Source: Perkinsus chesapeaki ATCC PRA-425
Taxonomy: Eukaryota > Protista > Perkinsozoa
Length of the DNA: 64,000 nt
Assembly: GCA_013115145.1 (NCBI GenBank)
Contig: JAAPAO010000037.1
Coordinates: forward strand, 50,009 to 114,008
Direction of reading: 5' to 3'
In this document: positions 23,681 to 31,877 of the stretch, piece by piece
Position numbering within the stretch: the first letter of the stretch is position 1
How the letters are laid out: the number at the start of each line of letters is the position of its first letter
Translations under genes and position numbers: made by a program
Notes under the pieces: model-generated
What the model was told of the DNA's origin: nothing
The model's database searches: none
Seen by the model: only the letters and a program-made list of their open reading frames with translations

Positions 23681-25166
23681 ATGAATTCAGATCGTATTAG
23701 GCGTCGAGTGTCCGAAAGCCTATTGGCTAAGATAGAGGATCAGCTTACCAGACGGGCATCAGAGGGGAGCTATTGCCTGACTGATGACAAGGTCATCGAA
23801 GCGGTCAAAAGTGAGGCAGATGAGTCAGTTGTGAGCTGCACGAGTGAAAGCGCCGGCGAAATGCCGACAATGGATAACGCAGTGGCCGGCAGTGGTCGGT
23901 GGAAAAAGGATGAAGATATTGAAGAGGGCACGTTGAGTGTCGACGATGGAGGGAGACCCGAGAGAAGAAGGGTATCTGCAGAGGAGCCGCCCCGGTCTGA
24001 CAATGGGAAAGCCATCACGGGCAGCGGTGCCGTTGGGAGGTCTACCGGTAGCAGCTCTCCAGACACTGAGCTACCGTTGTTCACGAGGCGACCGTCCTTG
24101 CTGGCATTCGCGAGACAGGCATCAAAAGTTGCTAAGGAGTTCGAGAGGACTATGCAGGAGAGGAATAAGATGGCAGCAGCAGCAGCAGCACGAAAGGACA
24201 GTGGCCCAAAGGATAAAGCAAGTGCAATGGAGGAGAACGAGGAGGAACTCACTTCCCGAATTCAAAGTAGCCTTACTTTACTATTGAACTATCTATAAAA
24301 GCAATCTCAGAGGCTACACGGATAGGGTACGGTATTGGCAGGCTGAGTGAAATAGTGGACGGGTTGTGTGGCCCAAAGTCTGAGTTAGCACGCGCTTGGC
24401 GGACATGGGTGAGGTTTGAGTAGGTCGCCTTCATCTGCCTCTCATAACGCTACTTTACCAGTTATAAATTCACGCGGTGGTTCGAGGCTAAAGTCCGAGC
24501 TTGCCACCATATGCACTGTGCTCTTCAACTTGTTGTATGTAGGCTGATGACACTATAGCTTACCCATCTGATAGTGGTTCGGTGGTAGGTGAAAGCGGCA
24601 CTAGCTGGAGCGATTAGTCGACTCAGATGGGCGCCTGTCCGTGCCGACCCAGGAAACTGTATTACAACTACCTAACTCTATCCTCTTTTATCACCAACCA
24701 TCGGTAGATTCCCGCCACATTCCTCGACTTAACCATTTATTTTCGGCTATGTATGAGGCACAATTGATCCTCGGTGTTTCCCGTCTACATGCCTTACTAG
24801 ACAAGGCCCTACATCGCCGCTTAAGGGACGCCATGAAGGCCCTGTCAATATGGGTATGCTGAATTGGAAGCGCAGCTCTGTTCTAAGTTACGTTAGTACG
24901 GCTTCCGAGGCCACAGCCGCCAGGCGCGAGTATCTATCACTGCTGGAGCTGGATCACCGAACGTGAGCTCGGATACGAGGTCCACCGGTGGTCGCCGAGC
25001 AACCGACGTTGGTGTAGCCAATAGCCTACTCAATCGGGAGACTCTTCTGGTAAGTGTACGAACAACTACCAGATGACATCGTCTCTGCTCAGAGGCTGCA
25101 GGCATTGCTTAAAGAGAGGGAGAGTGAGCTGAGGCTCAAACTAGCACGGGAAGCTAATTCTCGTTA
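23681..25166 (+). CDS. Hypothetical protein with an acidic/disordered N-terminus, Trp-containing helical segments and a coiled-coil end
   Basis: Long first exon 23681-about 24265, then spliced exons (ELARAWRTW, FTRWFEAK, RLRDAMKALSIW) ending LKERESELRLKLAREANSR*. Confidence 0.45.
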
Positions 25167-25261
25167 GCATGTGAAGCATGTTGGAATCAAGCTTTCTAAC
25201 TACCTCTTGTTCGTGTTTGCTCCCCCCGGAAAGCCTCTCTAACCTCACGTAGCTACCTCTA

Positions 25262-28040
25262 ATGCCGCTGCCATCGCTAGGTCGGCGGATAGGTGTTCTC
25301 CAGCACCATCGGAGGCGAGTATCCTGTATTGGCCCCACCCAGCAGCATGGCTACCTAGCTGCTGCCATCAATTATCAAGGCACCTTCTTTCGCAGCTCTC
25401 AGGGCACACTGACCATGGGAAGGCGTGCTTGCAGTACCGTCACGGCAAACACGACATCCAAGCAAGAGCCCAGCAAAACGTCGTCTGATATGGAGGACAT
25501 TGCTGAGTTCCTAGCACTGGCTCGGGATGACCTAAACCTAGTAACTCACATGCCCCTCTTTTCCTTGAAGCACTTGAAATAGGTTGCCAAGGACTTGGCA
25601 GAGTCTAACACTATTGATAAGAAAACCCTACAGTGGATGCAAAAAGTAGCATTCAATGCTGGAGCCACTAGATCGTCTAGATTTGCTTTGATCAGTACCG
25701 AGTGAGCCACTTGTCGGACACGCCTGAAAAAGCCAATCAAGTCCTAAAATGGACGTTCATATGCTCAGCTGTGATATTCGGTCAACTAAGTGAGCTCCAA
25801 CTCATTATAACTAGCAGATACCCTTCATCGGCTTCGGAATCCTAGACAACTCTCTTATGCTTATTTTCGGTGAACAGATAGACAACTCCCTTTGCGTAGT
25901 CATGGGGTTCAGGCAAGCCCGATGACGTGAGGACCTACCTAGCAGTATTGTTTCCCTCTCAGTACTCTGGCAGCAGCAGCCCTTGGGAATGCCTTCTCGG
26001 ATTTAGCTGGTGTATTTGCTGGCTCGCACATAGAGCACCACGCTGAGCTGTACAGGGATCTTATCCTATTCCTTTCTGATTGCTCTCCTGCTGTTAGTCG
26101 TGGTATTAAGGTTCCTCAAGTGTCATTACAGACACAGCGTAGCCCAAGATTTAAAGTAGTCTTGCTGCAGCCCTTTTACTAGAAGTGTGTGTCTCCCAGA
26201 TGGCCAAGAGCTTCGGTCAGGCCGCAGGCTTATTCTTCGGCTGCCTGCTGGGCATGGCTCCCCTCCTGTGGCTTGATCCCCTCAAGGCTGAGCGCACTCG
26301 TTTGCAAAGTAGCTGATGCCGTTCATCATGGGTAGATATTGGTTGGTCTAGACAAACGTCGGGAGATCTTCGAAGAGACCATCGATGAGCTTTGTAAGAT
26401 CCTGGACGCCAAAAGTGGTGTGCTCATGCTTGTCGACAAAGAAAAGAATGAACTATTCAGCGAAACGGGCGGCTCTAAGGGAGTATTCAGGTCACGCAGT
26501 TCTCCATGTGCTTGGCAATTCAACTTGTGATCGGTAGATCTCCTATCGATCAAGATAATGCCGGTATCATGGGTTATGTTGCCGCCACTGGGCAGATGGT
26601 GAATATTGAAGATGTCTCTAAGACCGATTTCTACAACAAACGGAGGTATCCTTTCCCTTGCCTCGCTTAACTCTCTTTATTAAGCTAGACATGACGACTA
26701 CCACGGCCATGGCTTTGAGGCTGGCTCCATCATATGCATGCCTATCTTCGATTCGCTTCGAAACGTTGTTGGTAGGGTTGCTTCGGTCCCTCAGCTAATT
26801 GAATGCTGTAAGGCCAGGTGTGGTTGAACTTGCCAAGTCGCGGCATTCGGGGAGGACCTTCAGCGAGAAAGATGAAGATCTACTAGCTGCGATGTCATCT
26901 CATATAGCAACATATCTCCATGGCACTGATGGCCCTCAAGGCTTCAAAGCCGTAGGATGGACCACTGTGGAGGATAGGCACTTCTACTTGTAGGTGTTAC
27001 ATGCCTGCTCATCTAACATGTTGGTGAAGTCATCCAGGATACTTTTGTCACAGCAACAAAGAGAGGAAAGACTCTTTGCGGATGTCATGCACGAAGTTAA
27101 GAGGATAATGAAGGCTGGTCAGTAATGGGAAGATACTTGGTCTCGGAGCGCTTCTTCAGAGGCGGCAATGTTGATGCTCATGGATGACTCTTCGCCTGAC
27201 CAGCCACCCGTCTTGTATACCAAGTATTGTGAGGGCATCGACTTCAGCGAGACAACGCCCGTTGGTATGGTAGCACAGTTTCAGAGCCACTGTTACTTAT
27301 AACGCCACTAGGTGTTGGAATCATGGGGCATGTAGCCCAGACAGGTAAACCGTTCATCATTGACGATGTTACTGAGGCCGGTGATCTGTACGATCCTGAG
27401 CGACATGAGAACTACAAGGGCACTGGCAAGTCTGTTCGCTCCGTTATGTGCGTAAGTCGATATTGTACAGTTAGCGTAGATGTCCGATGCTCATGCTTTC
27501 AGGTCCCAATATTTGATACTAGACGAAGAGTTATAGGAGTTATTGAGGTTATCAACAAGAAGTCGCCGCGAGGCGAGGCTGACTTTTTCACAGGTGAGAG
27601 AGGCCACTTCACAGTCGCTGAATTATTCAGCCTATTTCAGAACGCGATAAGGATATTCTTGGTAACATTGCAAATCATGTAGCCTTAAATTTGGAGGGAA
27701 CTGGATCCAGTTTGAGGAAGGCATGCTGGCTCATGTGACTTTCTCTCCTCACCGCACGCAATAGGTTCTCCGAATGGTGCGAGAGCAGAGTAACACCACA
27801 GCGCAGATAGTTCGATCACCTTCATCTTTGCGACCGATAAATCTAAGCGATGAAGCTCATGCAGTCACAACGACTACCGTCCACCATGGAAACGTAAGCG
27901 CTGACAGGAAAGAGTCTGATGTGGTGGGTTGGTGTACGCTGCTGCCTAGGAGGCATCTATCGTCTGTAGGCGGGATCAAGAGCGGACATTCAGCAGGGCA
28001 AAGGTGTTTAGTAATTTTGCCGAAGACTGACAATATTTGA
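25262..28040 (+). CDS. TMEM65-domain membrane protein fused to two C-terminal GAF domains, predicted mitochondrial
   Basis: Arg/Ser/Thr-rich, acid-free N-terminus (…TMGRRACST). TMEM65 domain NQVLKWTFICSAIPFIGFGILDNSLMLIFGEQIDNSLCVVMGFSTLAAAALGNAFSDLAG...KSFGQAAGLFFGCLLGMAPLLW. GAF1: ELCKILDAKSGVLMLVD...GIMGYVAATGQMVNIEDV...ICMPIFD...FSEKDEDLL. GAF2: GIMGHVAQTGKPFIIDDV...SVMCVPIFD...VIGVIEVINK. 3' end approximate. Confidence 0.85.
25913..25962 (+). other. Non-canonical GC-AG intron (50 nt)
   Basis: Removing GCAAG...CTCAG joins TTC AG|T ACT CTG to give the conserved TMEM65 G-x-S-T-x-AAAALGN motif. Confidence 0.7.
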
Positions 28041-28213
28041 CACCCACTCGAGAGTCATATTTGTGACTTCATGGTAGATATAACTTTTTATAATGTGATT
28101 GTTTTCGTATTTCTGCAAGCTCTTTGATTTGTCAATTATGGTACTGTGGATGATCACATGGCACGCTTTCAGCCATTATTTCCTATAAACCATTCGCAGT
28201 CTCTACCGAAAGC

Positions 28214-29071
28214 ATGCCTGCCTTACCGCAGCTCCCGGAGTAAAGTCCTCGTTCCTTTGCCGAGAGATGTTATGGTTTGGTACTTAGGGAGTCACCTCTA
28301 GTAGTGGCAGACTTGTACAGAGGGTATGAGGCTACATCTCCAATAGCGCCCGTTGTCACTTTGTTCTCTCGGTTGAAGAGCCCCAGAAAAGAATACGCCA
28401 AAGTAGGATGAGCTTCGCCATTTCGGGTAGACAAGCCAGAGAACAGGTTCTCATTTCACGAGTCAGACAATCGAACATGTACATTACCTACTGTGTGATC
28501 TTGATGCTGCTCTCTCTCATTACAATGGCATGCCTCACAAGGTGTATCCAATCACTGCAGACAGCAGCTCACATCATTCAGTCGATTTCAGACTGGAGTC
28601 CCCGTTCGTTCGAGAATCCAAAACGGAAATGTTTGGGCTCGGGTTTGTGGAAGTAAGCTGTGCTACCCAACCTCTGTCGCTTTCGATATGCTGTCTCAGT
28701 TACTTCTCACCAGCGCTATCGTTGGAGAGTGTGCAATAGACCTCTGGGCCCAAGGAGGTTGGATGTATTTTTTTAGTTTGTGGCATGTATTCGACTTTTG
28801 CTTGGCGGTGACTTCTGTTGCTTGTCTTGCTGCCGAGGCTGTTGTGGTACGCTCACTTCCTGAAAGGCCCGCAGCGATGCTGATTATGCTAAGGTAATGC
28901 CGAGTAACGTACTTTGTCCATCTTATTGTCCCTCTTATTAGATATGGAATGATGGTGGCTAGAGTAGTCAAGTTTGCCCATGACGCTTGCTCTGCGCAGA
29001 CCCGCGTTCGGGTGGCCCGAGATGCAGTGATTGATTTTTCTAAGTTGCCATCAGATGATGACAGTGCATGA
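28214..29071 (+). CDS. Stand-alone voltage-sensor-like (S1-S4) membrane protein without a pore domain
   Basis: S1 YITYCVILMLLSLITMACL; S2 LLLTSAIVGECAIDL; S3 WHVFDFCLAVTSVACL (W-x-x-FD); S4 MLIMLRYGMMVARVVKF; stop soon after (DDDSA*). Start approximate. Confidence 0.65.
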
Positions 29072-29161
29072 AGGCTTATGCCATTGTAGCTCTCCATGCT
29101 ATGAATGATGTGAAATGACCTTGTTGAGTTCGTTAGTAGATCCACGACGTAAGAATCAAAG

Positions 29162-31877
29162 ATGTTGCCATGGGTTCTCGCTTTCCTGTTGGCTCTGAGC
29201 GCTCGGAACATTTTTAGCAGCCAGTGTGATGGAGGCGATTGGATAAACTTCATGGAAGCTATCGAAGTCATTAGCTCACCAGGCCCTGGTAGCCTGAACA
29301 ACTTCTGTATCATGCTCCAAAATAATCGGTTGTCAGTGCCTGTAGGACAGTGGCTGACTGGTGCATTACTGGCAGCCGAGCCTCTTCTTAAAAGGCTTCT
29401 CAATGAGGTAGAGCCAATTTCTGATACACCCTGTTGGATATGTTGACGGTATAGGTTTACCTCAACAACCGGCCAGAAGGAGACCAGCCACTCATAACAG
29501 AATGCCCAAAAGGCTTCGGCAAGTTGTTCCTCCTCCAAAAGTACGGAGCTTCCAAGAGACATCCACCGCATCATATTTCCAGTATAGCGGAACAACTCAC
29601 GAGTCCTGATACAGTTCAACACACCCGAGGCATGGAAATTCTATCAGGCGAGCTCAGAGAAGCCTTTGGATTCAGTGCCGAGTTTGCAAAGGTAATTTCT
29701 CCGATTGTTCTTGTGACCGCGCGTTTCACCTTTCTAAGGTACATCTCTCAGAGACACTCCTCCGTCAGGCGTGGGAACTCCGCCGCGAGCCATTCCGGGA
29801 GCTCATCAACTTGCATTTGCAGCATCGTAACTCGCTTCCAGGCAACTTCAATCTCCTGAGCCGCGTATGCCCATTGTTCATGTTGAATCCACCGCCAGCG
29901 ACGCTTCTGTCGTCTCTAGAGCCCCTGGGTCTACCACTACATGAGTCTTCTACTTGCGAATTTGTGATTGGTCCACTAGACACGTGGCGGCTGCTTCCAG
30001 GTGATGTAAATCTCATGAAAGCACGGTTGAGCGAAGCGGTACACTTGCTGCAGGCCCGGCCTGACGTCATTGGAGTTTCTATGCGCTCCAAGTTGCTTGA
30101 CGAATATACTAACAGTGAACTACTAGCAGCACTGTTCGACCCAGATCCTCTTGACCAAATCCCATATGACTATCTACTATTGCAGCTTGGCCTGGCTTTG
30201 CGTGGTATTCCAGAAATACTGGCTGGCATACGAGATGGCGTGGTTGAGATTCCAGGCGTTCGCGATAAACGACAGCTTGTTCCATGCGGTTTTGACCTAG
30301 CATGTTCATCCGCTTTTCTTGGTAACTTCACTGGAGATTGGAGCACGGACGTTTGGCTCAGGCGTCTCGGCCAACCTGAAGAGTCATCTCCGTTGCTGGC
30401 AATAAGCCGTGGTATCTTCCGACACACTAATCTCGAATCGGTTGTGGACATTGTCCCACCGTACGAATTTGACATAAGACTGCCGGAAAAACTGGATGTC
30501 TTCATTGCCCCTGTTGACGTAGTCGTACCCTGCCGAGAGATGTTCGGCTGGTTGCTGGTCGATATGGTACAATCTCTGTCTTTGGCCCTCACTAGCTTTC
30601 GCCATGACCAACTACATCTCGTCCTTCCCGAGTTGATACATGTTTTTCATGACAGTCGATGGACAACTGATAAACCGCTGGACGATTGGCCACTCATCGA
30701 TGCTGTTCAAGAAGCATGTCGTATGACTGGTACCGAAGAACGAATACCTTTTGATGAGGTATTTGATGTGGATTACTTCACTCAGTCCACTGGAGTGCCA
30801 GTCGTGTCCTGGAATGTGTGGGGAGAAGAGTCCTTAGACTGGCTGATAATGCTCCGGGACCTACCCTTGCCTGGAGGGTATACTGAAGGGGTCGTTGAAA
30901 CAACTGGTCCTCACATACCTTGCCGAAATGCTACAGGAGTTAATCGGATAGCGATTCTATTCGGAAAGCCTGTCTTGGTGAAAAATACGTTATGTGTGGC
31001 ATCCACGACAAATGCCTCGTGGAATCCCTATGGATATCGCTCCGGGCTCGAGAGCATCCTCTCAAGCCACGATGGTAGGACTGTTAATATCGGTTTTTAT
31101 TTCTACTTCTGGTTGGGAGGAGAGCGAAGTCGCATGACTATGTCTAGTGCGAGGGTCTCCACCAGTATGGTCATGCCCAGTTTGTGGAGGAGCATACGAT
31201 TTAGTAGTGCAGTCTCGAGCACTGTTCGAAATGCCGTTTCCCGCAGGTCCAGCATTACAGCAGCTAGCTGCGTCCATCTATCCGGGTACTGAGTACGTGG
31301 CCGTACATTGGCGATGGAGGAACTCCTCAAAACTGTTGAGGTGGCCGAAAACTTCACAACGACTTATTCCTACTTGGACAAGCCCAGAAAAGGAAAGGTG
31401 AGTTCGTATACTTACTGATTCCCTACTGTGAGTTTTCTCAGGCAGTTCCACCTCGCCCAGCCTCAGTCTTTCGCTCGTTTGGTTTTCAATGCATTGCCTT
31501 CCTCTGTCCGTTGTTATCACAAGTTTTTTCTGATGACCAACATCCAGGAGAACTCATCACACGCTGTAGAATTCGAGGACGAGTTGCGTGCTATCCGGAA
31601 GGAACAGTGTCCATCTTCAAGCCCGAAGTTGCAAGTGACTGTGGGTAATGGTCTGGCTGCAAGACCCTTGCCAGGACTTCGTCACGCTGGACCACTTGTT
31701 CTCGAGATGGCGATTGCGGCCAGGGCCCAGCACTTTGTCGGGTTTGCGGACGGATGGATAGCGGGAACAGCTAGTGTCTTGACTCTTATCGTCACGCAGC
31801 TGCGCATTCATCACTACGATGGAGACTTTGATTCAACGACTTTCGCATTTGATGGCGGTAATGAGTATCTCACATGA
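29162..31877 (+). CDS. GDP-fucose protein O-fucosyltransferase-family (O-FucT, GT-B) glycosyltransferase with a long N-terminal region
   Basis: Signal-like MLPWVLAFLLALSA; C-terminal O-FucT motifs YVAVHWR, KFFLMTN, EMAIAARAQHFVGF, SVLTLIVTQLR; introns spliced in consistent phase. Confidence 0.65.

What the first reader, a model, noticed from the sequence alone, without database searches (positions are those of the whole stretch)
25262..28040. Mitochondrial TMEM65 fused to tandem PDE-type GAF domains: candidate ligand-gated mitochondrial ion-exchange module
Seen: one continuously spliceable gene with a presequence-like N-terminus, a complete TMEM65 domain, two GAF domains retaining NKFDE-like motifs (AK..FSEKDE; INK..FTERDK) and no PDE, cyclase or kinase domain before the next gene. 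Established: animal TMEM65 is a small inner-membrane protein linked to mitochondrial Na+/Ca2+ exchange and has no GAF; tandem GAFs of this type bind cGMP/cAMP (and Na+ inhibits some). Inference: direct coupling of cyclic-nucleotide or Na+ sensing to mitochondrial cation flux. I cannot confirm whether this architecture is already described. Best candidate for a new system in this window.
Basis: partly seen in the sequence, partly recalled or inferred. Interest (0 to 1): 0.75.

Follow-up and report, generated by a model that had tools for sequence, protein, structure and literature searches.

The report
TMEM65 transporter fused to GAF sensors
A Perkinsus chesapeaki gene joins a TMEM65-type mitochondrial calcium-efflux membrane domain to two cyclic-nucleotide-type GAF sensor domains; the fusion is real and conserved in many marine protists but has never been studied, so it may be a built-in ligand switch on mitochondrial calcium export.

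Summary
Window 25262-28040 (+) is one 17-exon gene of Perkinsus chesapeaki with 38-51 nt introns. RNA contigs carry a spliced leader joined 9 nt before the ATG. The gene encodes 681 aa (659 with an alternative 3' end): an acid-free basic N-terminus, a complete three-helix TMEM65 domain, and a PDE/CyaB-type GAF-A/GAF-B tandem. No catalytic domain follows.

The public annotation (KAF4676198.1, 1862 aa) is a chimera of three genes. The downstream voltage-sensor-like gene has its own conserved start at 28214.

The fusion is not a one-off. Single-ORF TMEM65+GAF+GAF proteins occur in three Perkinsus species, dinoflagellates (with an added C2 domain, some with PAS) and diplonemids (with an EF-hand). 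ESM Atlas clusters place it in diatoms and Apicomplexa.

All four residues needed for human TMEM65 activity are conserved. Both GAFs resemble ligand-binding GAFs more than non-binding ones, but a pocket threonine is replaced.

By the human topology the sensors would face the intermembrane space. Mitochondrial location, ligand identity and regulation of transport are inferred, not shown.

No paper in the searched library mentions TMEM65 together with GAF. Verdict: a new variant of a known kind, of moderately high interest.

The parts
25251..25252 (+). AG acceptor for spliced-leader trans-splicing; the mRNA body starts at 25253, 9 nt before the ATG
   Evidence: three RNA contigs (one sample) start at 25251 with the loose end CCGTAGCCATTTTGGCTCA. 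Perkinsus uses a DinoSL-like leader (PMC3101222).
25262..28040 (+). Whole coding region of the TMEM65-GAF-GAF gene, 681 aa. Exons: 25262-25540, 25583-25645, 25696-25770, 25818-25912, 25963-26049, 26098-26155, 26200-26308, 26352-26490, 26538-26645, 26689-26771, 26818-26951, 26994-27117, 27160-27264, 27312-27451, 27503-27593, 27641-27720, 27765-28040.
   Evidence: model; identical in the exons shared with P0001 and 89% identical to P. olseni P0002; introns 1 and 2 seen in RNA; the GC donors lie at conserved intron positions.
25262..25465 (+). Presequence-like N-terminus (aa 1-68): 9 K/R, no D/E, rich in S/T/G
   Evidence: P. marinus exon 1 differs in sequence but has the same composition. Long-N-terminus family members are also basic and acid-poor.
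25696..26308 (+). TMEM65 domain over exons 3-7 (aa about 127-247). Three hydrophobic helices: about 130-153, 164-182 and 224-244. D149, D184, G187 and E195 correspond to human D132, D167, G170 and E178.
   Evidence: PF10507; hydropathy, loop charges; alignment with 240-aa mammalian TMEM65.
26309..26351 (+). 43-nt GT-AG intron at the TMEM65/GAF junction. If it were retained, an in-frame stop would follow at 26314-26316.
   Evidence: The spliced reading ...KAERTRLQ|NKRREIFEE... is identical in P. olseni and P. marinus proteins. No RNA covers this intron.
26352..26951 (+). Linker helix plus GAF-A (aa 256-410); motif A371 K372 ... F380 ... D384 E385
   Evidence: Best PDB sequence matches are the ligand-binding GAFs CyaB2 GAF-B, PDE2A GAF-B and PDE5 GAF-A.
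26994..27117 (+). Long helix connecting GAF-A to GAF-B (aa 411-451)
   Evidence: helices 199-214 and 220-242 of the model; collinear with the PDE5A GAF-A/GAF-B linker.
27160..27720 (+). GAF-B (aa 452-590); motif N551 K552 ... F562 ... D566 K567
27765..28040 (+). C-terminal tail with no recognised domain (aa 591-681). The first ~27 aa are conserved in Perkinsus and the rest diverges. Alternative ending: 27765-27893 plus 27950-28030.
28214..28239 (+). Start mini-exon (MPALPQLPE) of the NEXT gene, a voltage-sensor-like Ion_trans protein. It is followed by a 48-nt intron (28240-28287). This marks the end of the locus.
   Evidence: an ATG plus GTAAG donor is conserved in P. olseni L002; no such gene lies downstream in P. 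marinus L001; weak Ion_trans hit in the tail of P0001.

Best explanation
The gene encodes a nuclear-encoded, probably mitochondrial inner-membrane protein. Its three-helix TMEM65 core is the cation-transport part; animal TMEM65 mediates Na+-dependent Ca2+ efflux. Its C-terminus continues, through a conserved helix after TM3, into a PDE/CyaB-type GAF-A/GAF-B tandem.

Proposed mechanism:
- The tandem dimerises, as such tandems do in phosphodiesterases and cyanobacterial cyclases.
- This holds two small TMEM65 cores together.
- Binding of a small ligand, most likely cAMP or cGMP, changes the geometry passed through the GAF-A N-terminal helix to TM3.
- Ca2+ export is thereby tuned.

By homology with the human topology (N-terminus in the matrix, C-terminus outside), the sensors face the intermembrane space and so read cytosol-side signals. 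Relatives add C2, EF-hand or PAS modules at the same end.

Shown here: the gene structure, the domain architecture, conservation of the fusion and of the key TMEM65 residues, and the GAF fold type.

Inferred: location, topology, ligand and regulation of transport.
For: One gene:
- Spliced leader 9 nt before ATG 25262; introns 1 and 2 seen in RNA.
- The junction is a 43-nt intron, and the GAF part has no start codon.
- At least 15 cluster representatives align in one HSP from TMEM65 to the end of GAF-B. Those scanned against Pfam carry PF10507 plus two GAFs.
- These include complete transcriptome ORFs and about 2.4-kb contigs assembled from public sequencing runs, of transcript length.

Transport core is intact:
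[quoted passage not shown] They are conserved here and in the fused family members aligned.

Mitochondrial hints:
- The first 68 aa have no acidic residue and 9 K/R.
- The same composition appears in P. marinus despite sequence divergence, and in family members with long N-termini.
- Loop charges fit the human topology (PMC12830682).

Sensor:
- The tandem is collinear with PDE5A GAF-A+B (E 1e-19).
- AF2 gives pLDDT 86.6. The best structural matches are CyaB2, PDE5A, PDE2A and PDE6 tandems.
- Each GAF scores about 40 bits against ligand-binding GAFs and about 10-19 against their non-binding partners.
- The NK..F..DE motif is nearly invariant in GAF-A across the family.
- The linker after TM3 (D-x-x-K-A-E-K/R-L-K) is conserved.
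- C2, EF-hand and PAS add-ons sit at the same terminus in relatives.
Against: - No RNA covers the TMEM65/GAF junction or the 3' end in this species.
- No targeting predictor could be run, and there is no localisation data for any verified family member.
- In Perkinsus GAF-A the N of NKFDE is A371. In GAF-B the E is K567.
- The position that aligns with PDE2A T492 (T in PDE5 GAF-A and CyaB2 GAF-B) is A349 in GAF-A and V528 in GAF-B. The role of that Thr at the cyclic phosphate is from my own knowledge. The ligand or binding mode may therefore differ.
- In PDEs and cyclases the output domain lies C-terminal to the GAFs. Here it lies N-terminal, so the coupling route is unprecedented and untested.
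- C2 domains are not usual in the intermembrane space.
Confidence: 0.5

Rival explanations
1. The GAF tandem is only a dimerisation or scaffold module with no physiological ligand. It would build the TMEM65 oligomer without switching it.
For: In PDE2A and PDE5 one GAF of each pair serves dimerisation rather than binding (my own knowledge). Perkinsus GAF-A lacks the N of NKFDE, and both GAFs lack the Thr seen at the PDE2A T492 position. The 3-TM core presumably needs oligomerisation: the glycine-zipper mutant of human TMEM65 fails to express (PMC12830682).
Against: Both GAFs resemble the ligand-binding members more than the non-binding ones. The pocket-lining segments (GIMGxVA, RHDNYxGTG, LCMPI, GVxEVINK) are the most conserved parts of the family. 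Relatives add further sensor domains at the same end.
Confidence: 0.25
2. The protein is not mitochondrial. It would sit in another membrane (for example the plasma membrane, ER or an acidic Ca2+ store) with its GAF, C2, EF-hand and PAS domains in the cytosol.
For: GAF, C2, PAS and EF-hand are typical cytosolic signalling domains. No localisation data exist for a verified member. TMEM65 was once reported at the cardiac sarcolemma (cited in PMC12830682).
Against: N-termini are basic and acid-free in Perkinsus species and in many relatives. Animal TMEM65 is firmly mitochondrial (PMC12830682). [quoted passage not shown]
Confidence: 0.15
3. The gene continues downstream into the Ion_trans/voltage-sensor-like region, as in the public 1862-aa model and in P. 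olseni P0068. This would make a still larger fusion.
For: Two database models join them. The two genes are adjacent in P. chesapeaki and P. olseni.
Against: The downstream gene has its own ATG mini-exon with a canonical 48-nt intron, conserved between the two species. P. marinus has no such gene within 7 kb downstream. The P0001 join needs a 553-nt intron, whereas the gene's other introns are 38-51 nt, and it skips an exon conserved in P. olseni and P. marinus. No relative carries Ion_trans.
Confidence: 0.04
4. TMEM65 and the GAF tandem are two cistrons of a polycistronic transcript, separated by spliced-leader trans-splicing.
For: Perkinsus trans-splices (PMC3101222). Retention of the junction intron would end the ORF right after the TMEM65 domain.
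Against: The gap is 43 nt with GT-AG ends. The first in-frame Met after it lies inside GAF-A. Transcript-derived ORFs of other taxa encode both parts together.
Confidence: 0.02

Closest known systems
Animal TMEM65 (human, 240 aa)
   Same: Same Pfam family. Three TM helices, a presequence-like N-terminus, and conserved D132, D167, G170 and E178.
   Different: The animal protein ends in a short poly-acidic tail with no further domain. Here about 430 aa follow TM3, including two GAF domains. In a tree of the TMEM65 domain, the stand-alone (animal and metagenomic) sequences separate from all fused ones (SH-aLRT 91).
GAF-A/GAF-B tandems of PDE2, PDE5, PDE6, PDE10, PDE11 and cyanobacterial CyaB1/CyaB2
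   Same: Two GAF folds joined by a long helix, an NKFDE-type motif, and the best sequence and structure matches.
   Different: There is no phosphodiesterase or cyclase domain. The partner is a membrane transporter lying N-terminal, not C-terminal, to the tandem. The Thr aligned with PDE2A T492 is replaced by A or V.
MICU1/MICU2-MCU gating (my own knowledge)
   Same: The idea is the same: sensor domains on the intermembrane-space side control a mitochondrial Ca2+ pathway. Diplonemid relatives even carry an EF-hand at that end.
   Different: It is an analogy only, with no homology. MICU proteins are separate subunits regulating uptake. Here the sensor is fused to an efflux protein, and the ligand is probably a nucleotide.
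Dinoflagellate and diplonemid TMEM65-GAF-GAF proteins (Prorocentrum cordatum, Effrenium voratum, Cladocopium goreaui, Diplonema papillatum)
   Same: Same family and same domain order, 31-43% identity over the whole TMEM65-to-GAF-B span among family members.
   Different: They extend further, with C2 (some also with PAS) or an EF-hand. The Perkinsus tail has no recognisable domain.

Membership tests
TMEM65 (PF10507) | Match to the family profile above the curated cut-off | tested here: met
   93.3 bits against a cut-off of 25 in this genome's own protein P0001; three exons hit profile positions 4-33, 35-63 and 85-109.
TMEM65 (PF10507) | Three transmembrane helices | tested here: met
   hydrophobic segments at about 130-153, 164-182 and 224-244. 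Loop charges fit N-in/C-out.
TMEM65 (PF10507) | Residues required for activity in human TMEM65 (D132, D167, G170, E178; PMC12830682) | tested here: met
   D149, D184, G187 and E195. They are conserved in all the fused family members aligned.
TMEM65 (PF10507) | Mitochondrial inner-membrane location | not testable with these tools
   Only compositional evidence for a presequence is available.
TMEM65 (PF10507) | Na+-dependent Ca2+ efflux activity | not testable with these tools
   Needs flux assays.
cNMP-binding GAF tandem (PDE/CyaB type) | Two GAF folds in tandem joined by a long helix | tested here: met
   (AF2, pLDDT 86.6); top matches 1YKD, 3LFV, 1MC0 and PDE6; collinear with PDE5A.
cNMP-binding GAF tandem (PDE/CyaB type) | NKFDE motif (conserved in most characterised cNMP-binding GAFs; PMC4411481) | tested here: inconclusive
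   GAF-A reads A-K-F-D-E, where the family consensus is N-K-F-D-E. GAF-B reads N-K-F-D-K.
cNMP-binding GAF tandem (PDE/CyaB type) | Pocket residues as in liganded structures | tested here: inconclusive
   The equivalents of PDE2A I458, Y481 and E512 are kept in both GAFs, and that of D485 in GAF-A (E519 in GAF-B). The T488 equivalent is H345 in GAF-A and T524 in GAF-B. The T492 equivalent is A349 and V528. The contact list itself is from my own knowledge.
cNMP-binding GAF tandem (PDE/CyaB type) | Binding of cAMP or cGMP | not testable with these tools
   Needs ITC or radioligand binding.
GAF-regulated phosphodiesterase or cyclase | A catalytic PDEase_I or guanylate-cyclase domain in the same protein | tested here: not met
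   no such domain. The gene ends at 28030 or 28040, and the next gene starts at 28214.

The most novel reading that the evidence does not exclude
TMEM65-GAF proteins are direct cyclic-nucleotide-gated mitochondrial Ca2+ exporters, with sensors facing the intermembrane space. They would form a hard-wired cNMP-to-Ca2+ link across alveolates (Perkinsus, dinoflagellates, possibly Apicomplexa), diatoms and diplonemids. Their existence would be independent, Rosetta-stone-type support that TMEM65 itself is the regulated transporter.
Probability: 0.25. Interest if true: 0.85.

Novelty: new variant of a known kind. Interest (0 to 1): 0.6.

Why it matters
TMEM65 was proposed only in 2023-2025 as the mitochondrial Na+/Ca2+ exchanger or its key component, and how it is regulated is unknown. 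A natural, ancient fusion to ligand-sensing GAF domains, with C2, EF-hand or PAS modules in relatives, argues that its C-terminal side is a regulatory input. It also gives a tractable system for studying that control.

In alveolate parasites, cGMP/cAMP and Ca2+ signalling are tightly linked, but the molecular links are incompletely known. A nucleotide-binding domain on a mitochondrial Ca2+ exporter would be one such link.

On the practical side, the public P. chesapeaki, P. olseni and P. marinus gene models for this locus are chimeric or truncated and can now be corrected.

Tried and rejected
- **First splice model for exons 2 and 3** (25583-25694 and 25733-25770): replaced after re-reading the X6 RNA contig and the P. 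olseni protein P0051.
- **RNA evidence:** the only RNA runs holding the locus are 5'-end spliced-leader 454 contigs covering 25251-25719. A species-labelled run (X9) laid nothing. The junction and the 3' end therefore stay without RNA support.
- **Profile search with the family alignment**: swamped by bacterial GAF proteins, with only 8000 candidates scored. It undercounts the family.
- **Region search with a dinoflagellate TMEM65 domain**: found dinoflagellates but not the apicomplexan members reported by the ESM Atlas.
- **Toxoplasma TGGT1_270800:** I could not fetch this sequence, so its membership is unverified.
- **ESM Atlas search by shape**: gave only generic GAF proteins.
- **Neighbouring ORFs** (28699-29622 minus strand, 29811-31289, 23681-24295): no Pfam family.
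- **Literature:** searches for TMEM65 together with 'GAF' or 'GAF domain' found nothing. TMEM65 with Toxoplasma gave only unrelated papers.
- **Full spliced protein:** it has no reference id, so it was analysed only inside scripts. Tools received exon pieces or P0001:517-899 and P0001:556-905. The first is identical to the window's protein; the second is too, up to residue 899.
Full report
**What is there**

The region is eukaryotic, with many very short introns. I read the three forward frames and built a 17-exon model on the + strand from ATG 25262 to the stop at 28038-28040. The 16 introns are 38-51 nt long; 14 are GT-AG and 2 are GC-AG (donors at 25913 and 27721). Both GC donors lie at intron positions where P. 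marinus has ordinary GT donors. The product is 681 aa. A further possible intron (27894-27949) would give 659 aa and a stop at 28030.

**Organism and public models**

A phmmer search with a GAF-B piece returned P0001, which is identical to my model in all shared exons. P0001 is KAF4676198.1, 'Transmembrane protein 65 [Perkinsus chesapeaki]'. That 1862-aa model is a chimera:
- Its residues 1-342 map to the gene upstream.
- It reads intron 5 through.
- It skips exon 27765-28040 and runs on into the gene downstream.

The P. olseni (P0002, 499 aa) and P. marinus (P0043, 497 aa) models are 89-90% identical to mine. They support my splice choices and end shortly after GAF-B. Both start at an internal Met (M157 of my first model). 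The missing upstream exons are present in the P. marinus locus.

**RNA evidence**

Only three contigs from one 454 metatranscriptome sample hold the locus. The sample was made by RT-PCR, apparently with a spliced-leader primer. The contigs show three things:
- They start at 25251 with the loose end CCGTAGCCATTTTGGCTCA. This matches the dinoflagellate-type leader. Perkinsus uses near-identical leaders (PMC3101222), so an AG acceptor at 25251-25252 lies 9 nt before the ATG.
- They confirm intron 1 (25541-25582).
- One contig joins 25645 to 25696, allowing for one homopolymer slip. Together with the conserved YRV(S/T)(H/S)LSDTPEKAN in P. olseni, this made me correct exons 2 and 3.

No RNA covers the TMEM65/GAF junction or the 3' end.

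**Domains**

- TMEM65: three exons hit PF10507 at profile positions 4-33, 35-63 and 85-109. P0001 scores 93 bits against a cut-off of 25.
- GAF: two domains, with GAF E 4e-31 and GAF_2 E 1e-32.
- Hydropathy gives three helices. The loop charges (+ on the N-terminal side and in loop 2, - in loop 1) fit an N-in/C-out topology.
- Mammalian 240-aa TMEM65 sequences were fetched here and checked to carry D132, G140, E144, D167, G170, E178 and Q195. Against these, the four residues required for human TMEM65 activity (PMC12830682) are conserved as D149, D184, G187 and E195. They are conserved in the fused relatives aligned with them.

**Is it one gene?**

The junction is a 43-nt GT-AG intron. The reading ...PLLWLDPLKAERTRLQ|NKRREIFEE... 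is the same in all three Perkinsus species. The first Met after the junction lies inside GAF-A. More than 15 cluster representatives align to my protein in one HSP, from the start of TMEM65 to the end of GAF-B, at 31-43% identity. Those scanned against Pfam carry PF10507 plus two GAFs. Several are complete ORFs from transcriptome assemblies. Dinoflagellate members recur on about 2.4-kb contigs assembled from sequencing runs. The fusion is therefore real and expressed as one mRNA in other taxa.

**Where does the gene end?**

The downstream gene is voltage-sensor-like, with a weak Ion_trans hit. It has its own start: ATG 28214, a mini-exon MPALPQLPE, a GTAAAG donor, a 48-nt intron, then ESPLVV.... 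The same arrangement (MHPSPQLPE | GTAAGG...) is present in P. olseni, although the flanking DNA does not align. P. marinus has no such gene within 7 kb downstream. So no catalytic or channel domain belongs to this gene.

**Distribution of the family**

| Lineage | Evidence | Extra domains |
|---|---|---|
| Perkinsus chesapeaki, P. olseni, P. marinus | | none |
| Dinoflagellates: Prorocentrum cordatum, Effrenium voratum, Cladocopium goreaui | | C2, some with PAS |
| Diplonema papillatum and transcriptome relatives | | EF-hand |
| Diatoms (Bacillariophyta) | ESM Atlas clusters 'GAF/GAF/Transmembrane protein 65', | not examined |
| Apicomplexa | one ESM Atlas cluster, | not examined |

In a tree of the TMEM65 domain, the stand-alone animal and metagenomic sequences fall on one side of a branch (SH-aLRT 91) and all fused sequences on the other. 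A single origin is not excluded (the domain is short and the stand-alone sample is biased).

**The GAF tandem**

- It aligns collinearly with PDE5A GAF-A+GAF-B (E 1e-19), and also with CyaB2 and PDE2A.
- An AF2 model of TM3 plus the tandem (P0001:517-899, identical to the window's protein) has pLDDT 86.6. TM3 is followed by a three-residue break and then the long GAF-A N-terminal helix.
- Foldseek's best matches are the CyaB2, PDE5A, PDE2A and PDE6 tandems.
- Taken singly, each Perkinsus GAF scores about 40 bits against ligand-binding GAFs (PDE5 GAF-A, PDE2A GAF-B, CyaB2 GAF-B). Against their non-binding partners the scores are about 10-19 bits.
- The NKFDE motif, typical of cNMP-binding GAFs (PMC4411481), is nearly invariant in GAF-A across the family. 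In Perkinsus it reads A-K-F-D-E in GAF-A and N-K-F-D-K in GAF-B.
- Caveat: the position aligned with PDE2A T492 is Thr in PDE5 GAF-A and CyaB2 GAF-B in the printed alignments. Here it is A349 in GAF-A and V528 in GAF-B. That this Thr contacts the cyclic phosphate is my own recollection. The ligand remains open.

**Location and topology (inferred)**

- The first 68 residues have 9 K/R and no D/E.
- P. marinus exon 1 has diverged in sequence but keeps that composition.
- Most relatives with long N-termini look like presequences.
- Human TMEM65 has its N-terminal part in the matrix. Its C-terminal tag is accessible to protease on mitoplasts (PMC12830682). By homology the GAFs, and the C2, EF-hand or PAS modules of relatives, would therefore lie in the intermembrane space.
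- A lead I could not verify: Toxoplasma TGGT1_270800, a 'GAF domain-containing protein' with chromerid homologues, is in the mitochondrial proteome and the LOPIT mitochondrial-membrane fraction (PMC7877769).

**Novelty**

The sequences are public under automatic names. No paper in the searchable library contains both TMEM65 and GAF. The TMEM65 literature describes conservation only in animals, kinetoplastids and green algae (PMC12830682). I class the finding as a new variant of a known kind: a TMEM65 transporter with a built-in sensor, with the output domain N-terminal to the GAF tandem. That is the reverse of the arrangement in PDEs and cyclases.

Read laying was given 4501 letters.

Noticed in passing
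window 23681-31874: The public P. chesapeaki protein KAF4676198.1 (P0001, 1862 aa) merges three neighbouring + strand genes: an upstream gene of unknown function, the TMEM65-GAF gene, and a downstream gene with a voltage-sensor-like Ion_trans region and a long region without any Pfam match.
   Followed up: yes
window 28214-29100: The downstream gene starts with a 9-codon mini-exon and encodes four hydrophobic segments resembling S1-S4 of a voltage sensor (weak PF00520 hit, E 4e-5). It is adjacent to the TMEM65-GAF gene in P. olseni too, but not in P. marinus.
   Followed up: partly
window 25913 and 27721: Two GC-AG introns lie in a gene whose other 14 introns are GT-AG. P. marinus has GT at both positions.
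   Followed up: yes
L001 6500-7024 (P. marinus) and P0002/P0043: The P. marinus and P. olseni database models of this gene start at an internal Met inside TM1. The missing N-terminal exons, including a presequence-like exon 1, are present upstream in the P. marinus locus.
   Followed up: partly
window 28696-29622, minus strand: A 308-aa ORF runs antisense to the exons of the downstream + strand gene. It has no Pfam match and is probably a chance antisense ORF.
   Followed up: partly
window 26309-26351: If the junction intron were retained, translation would stop six codons later and give a stand-alone TMEM65 of about 257 aa. I did not test whether such an isoform exists.
   Followed up: no
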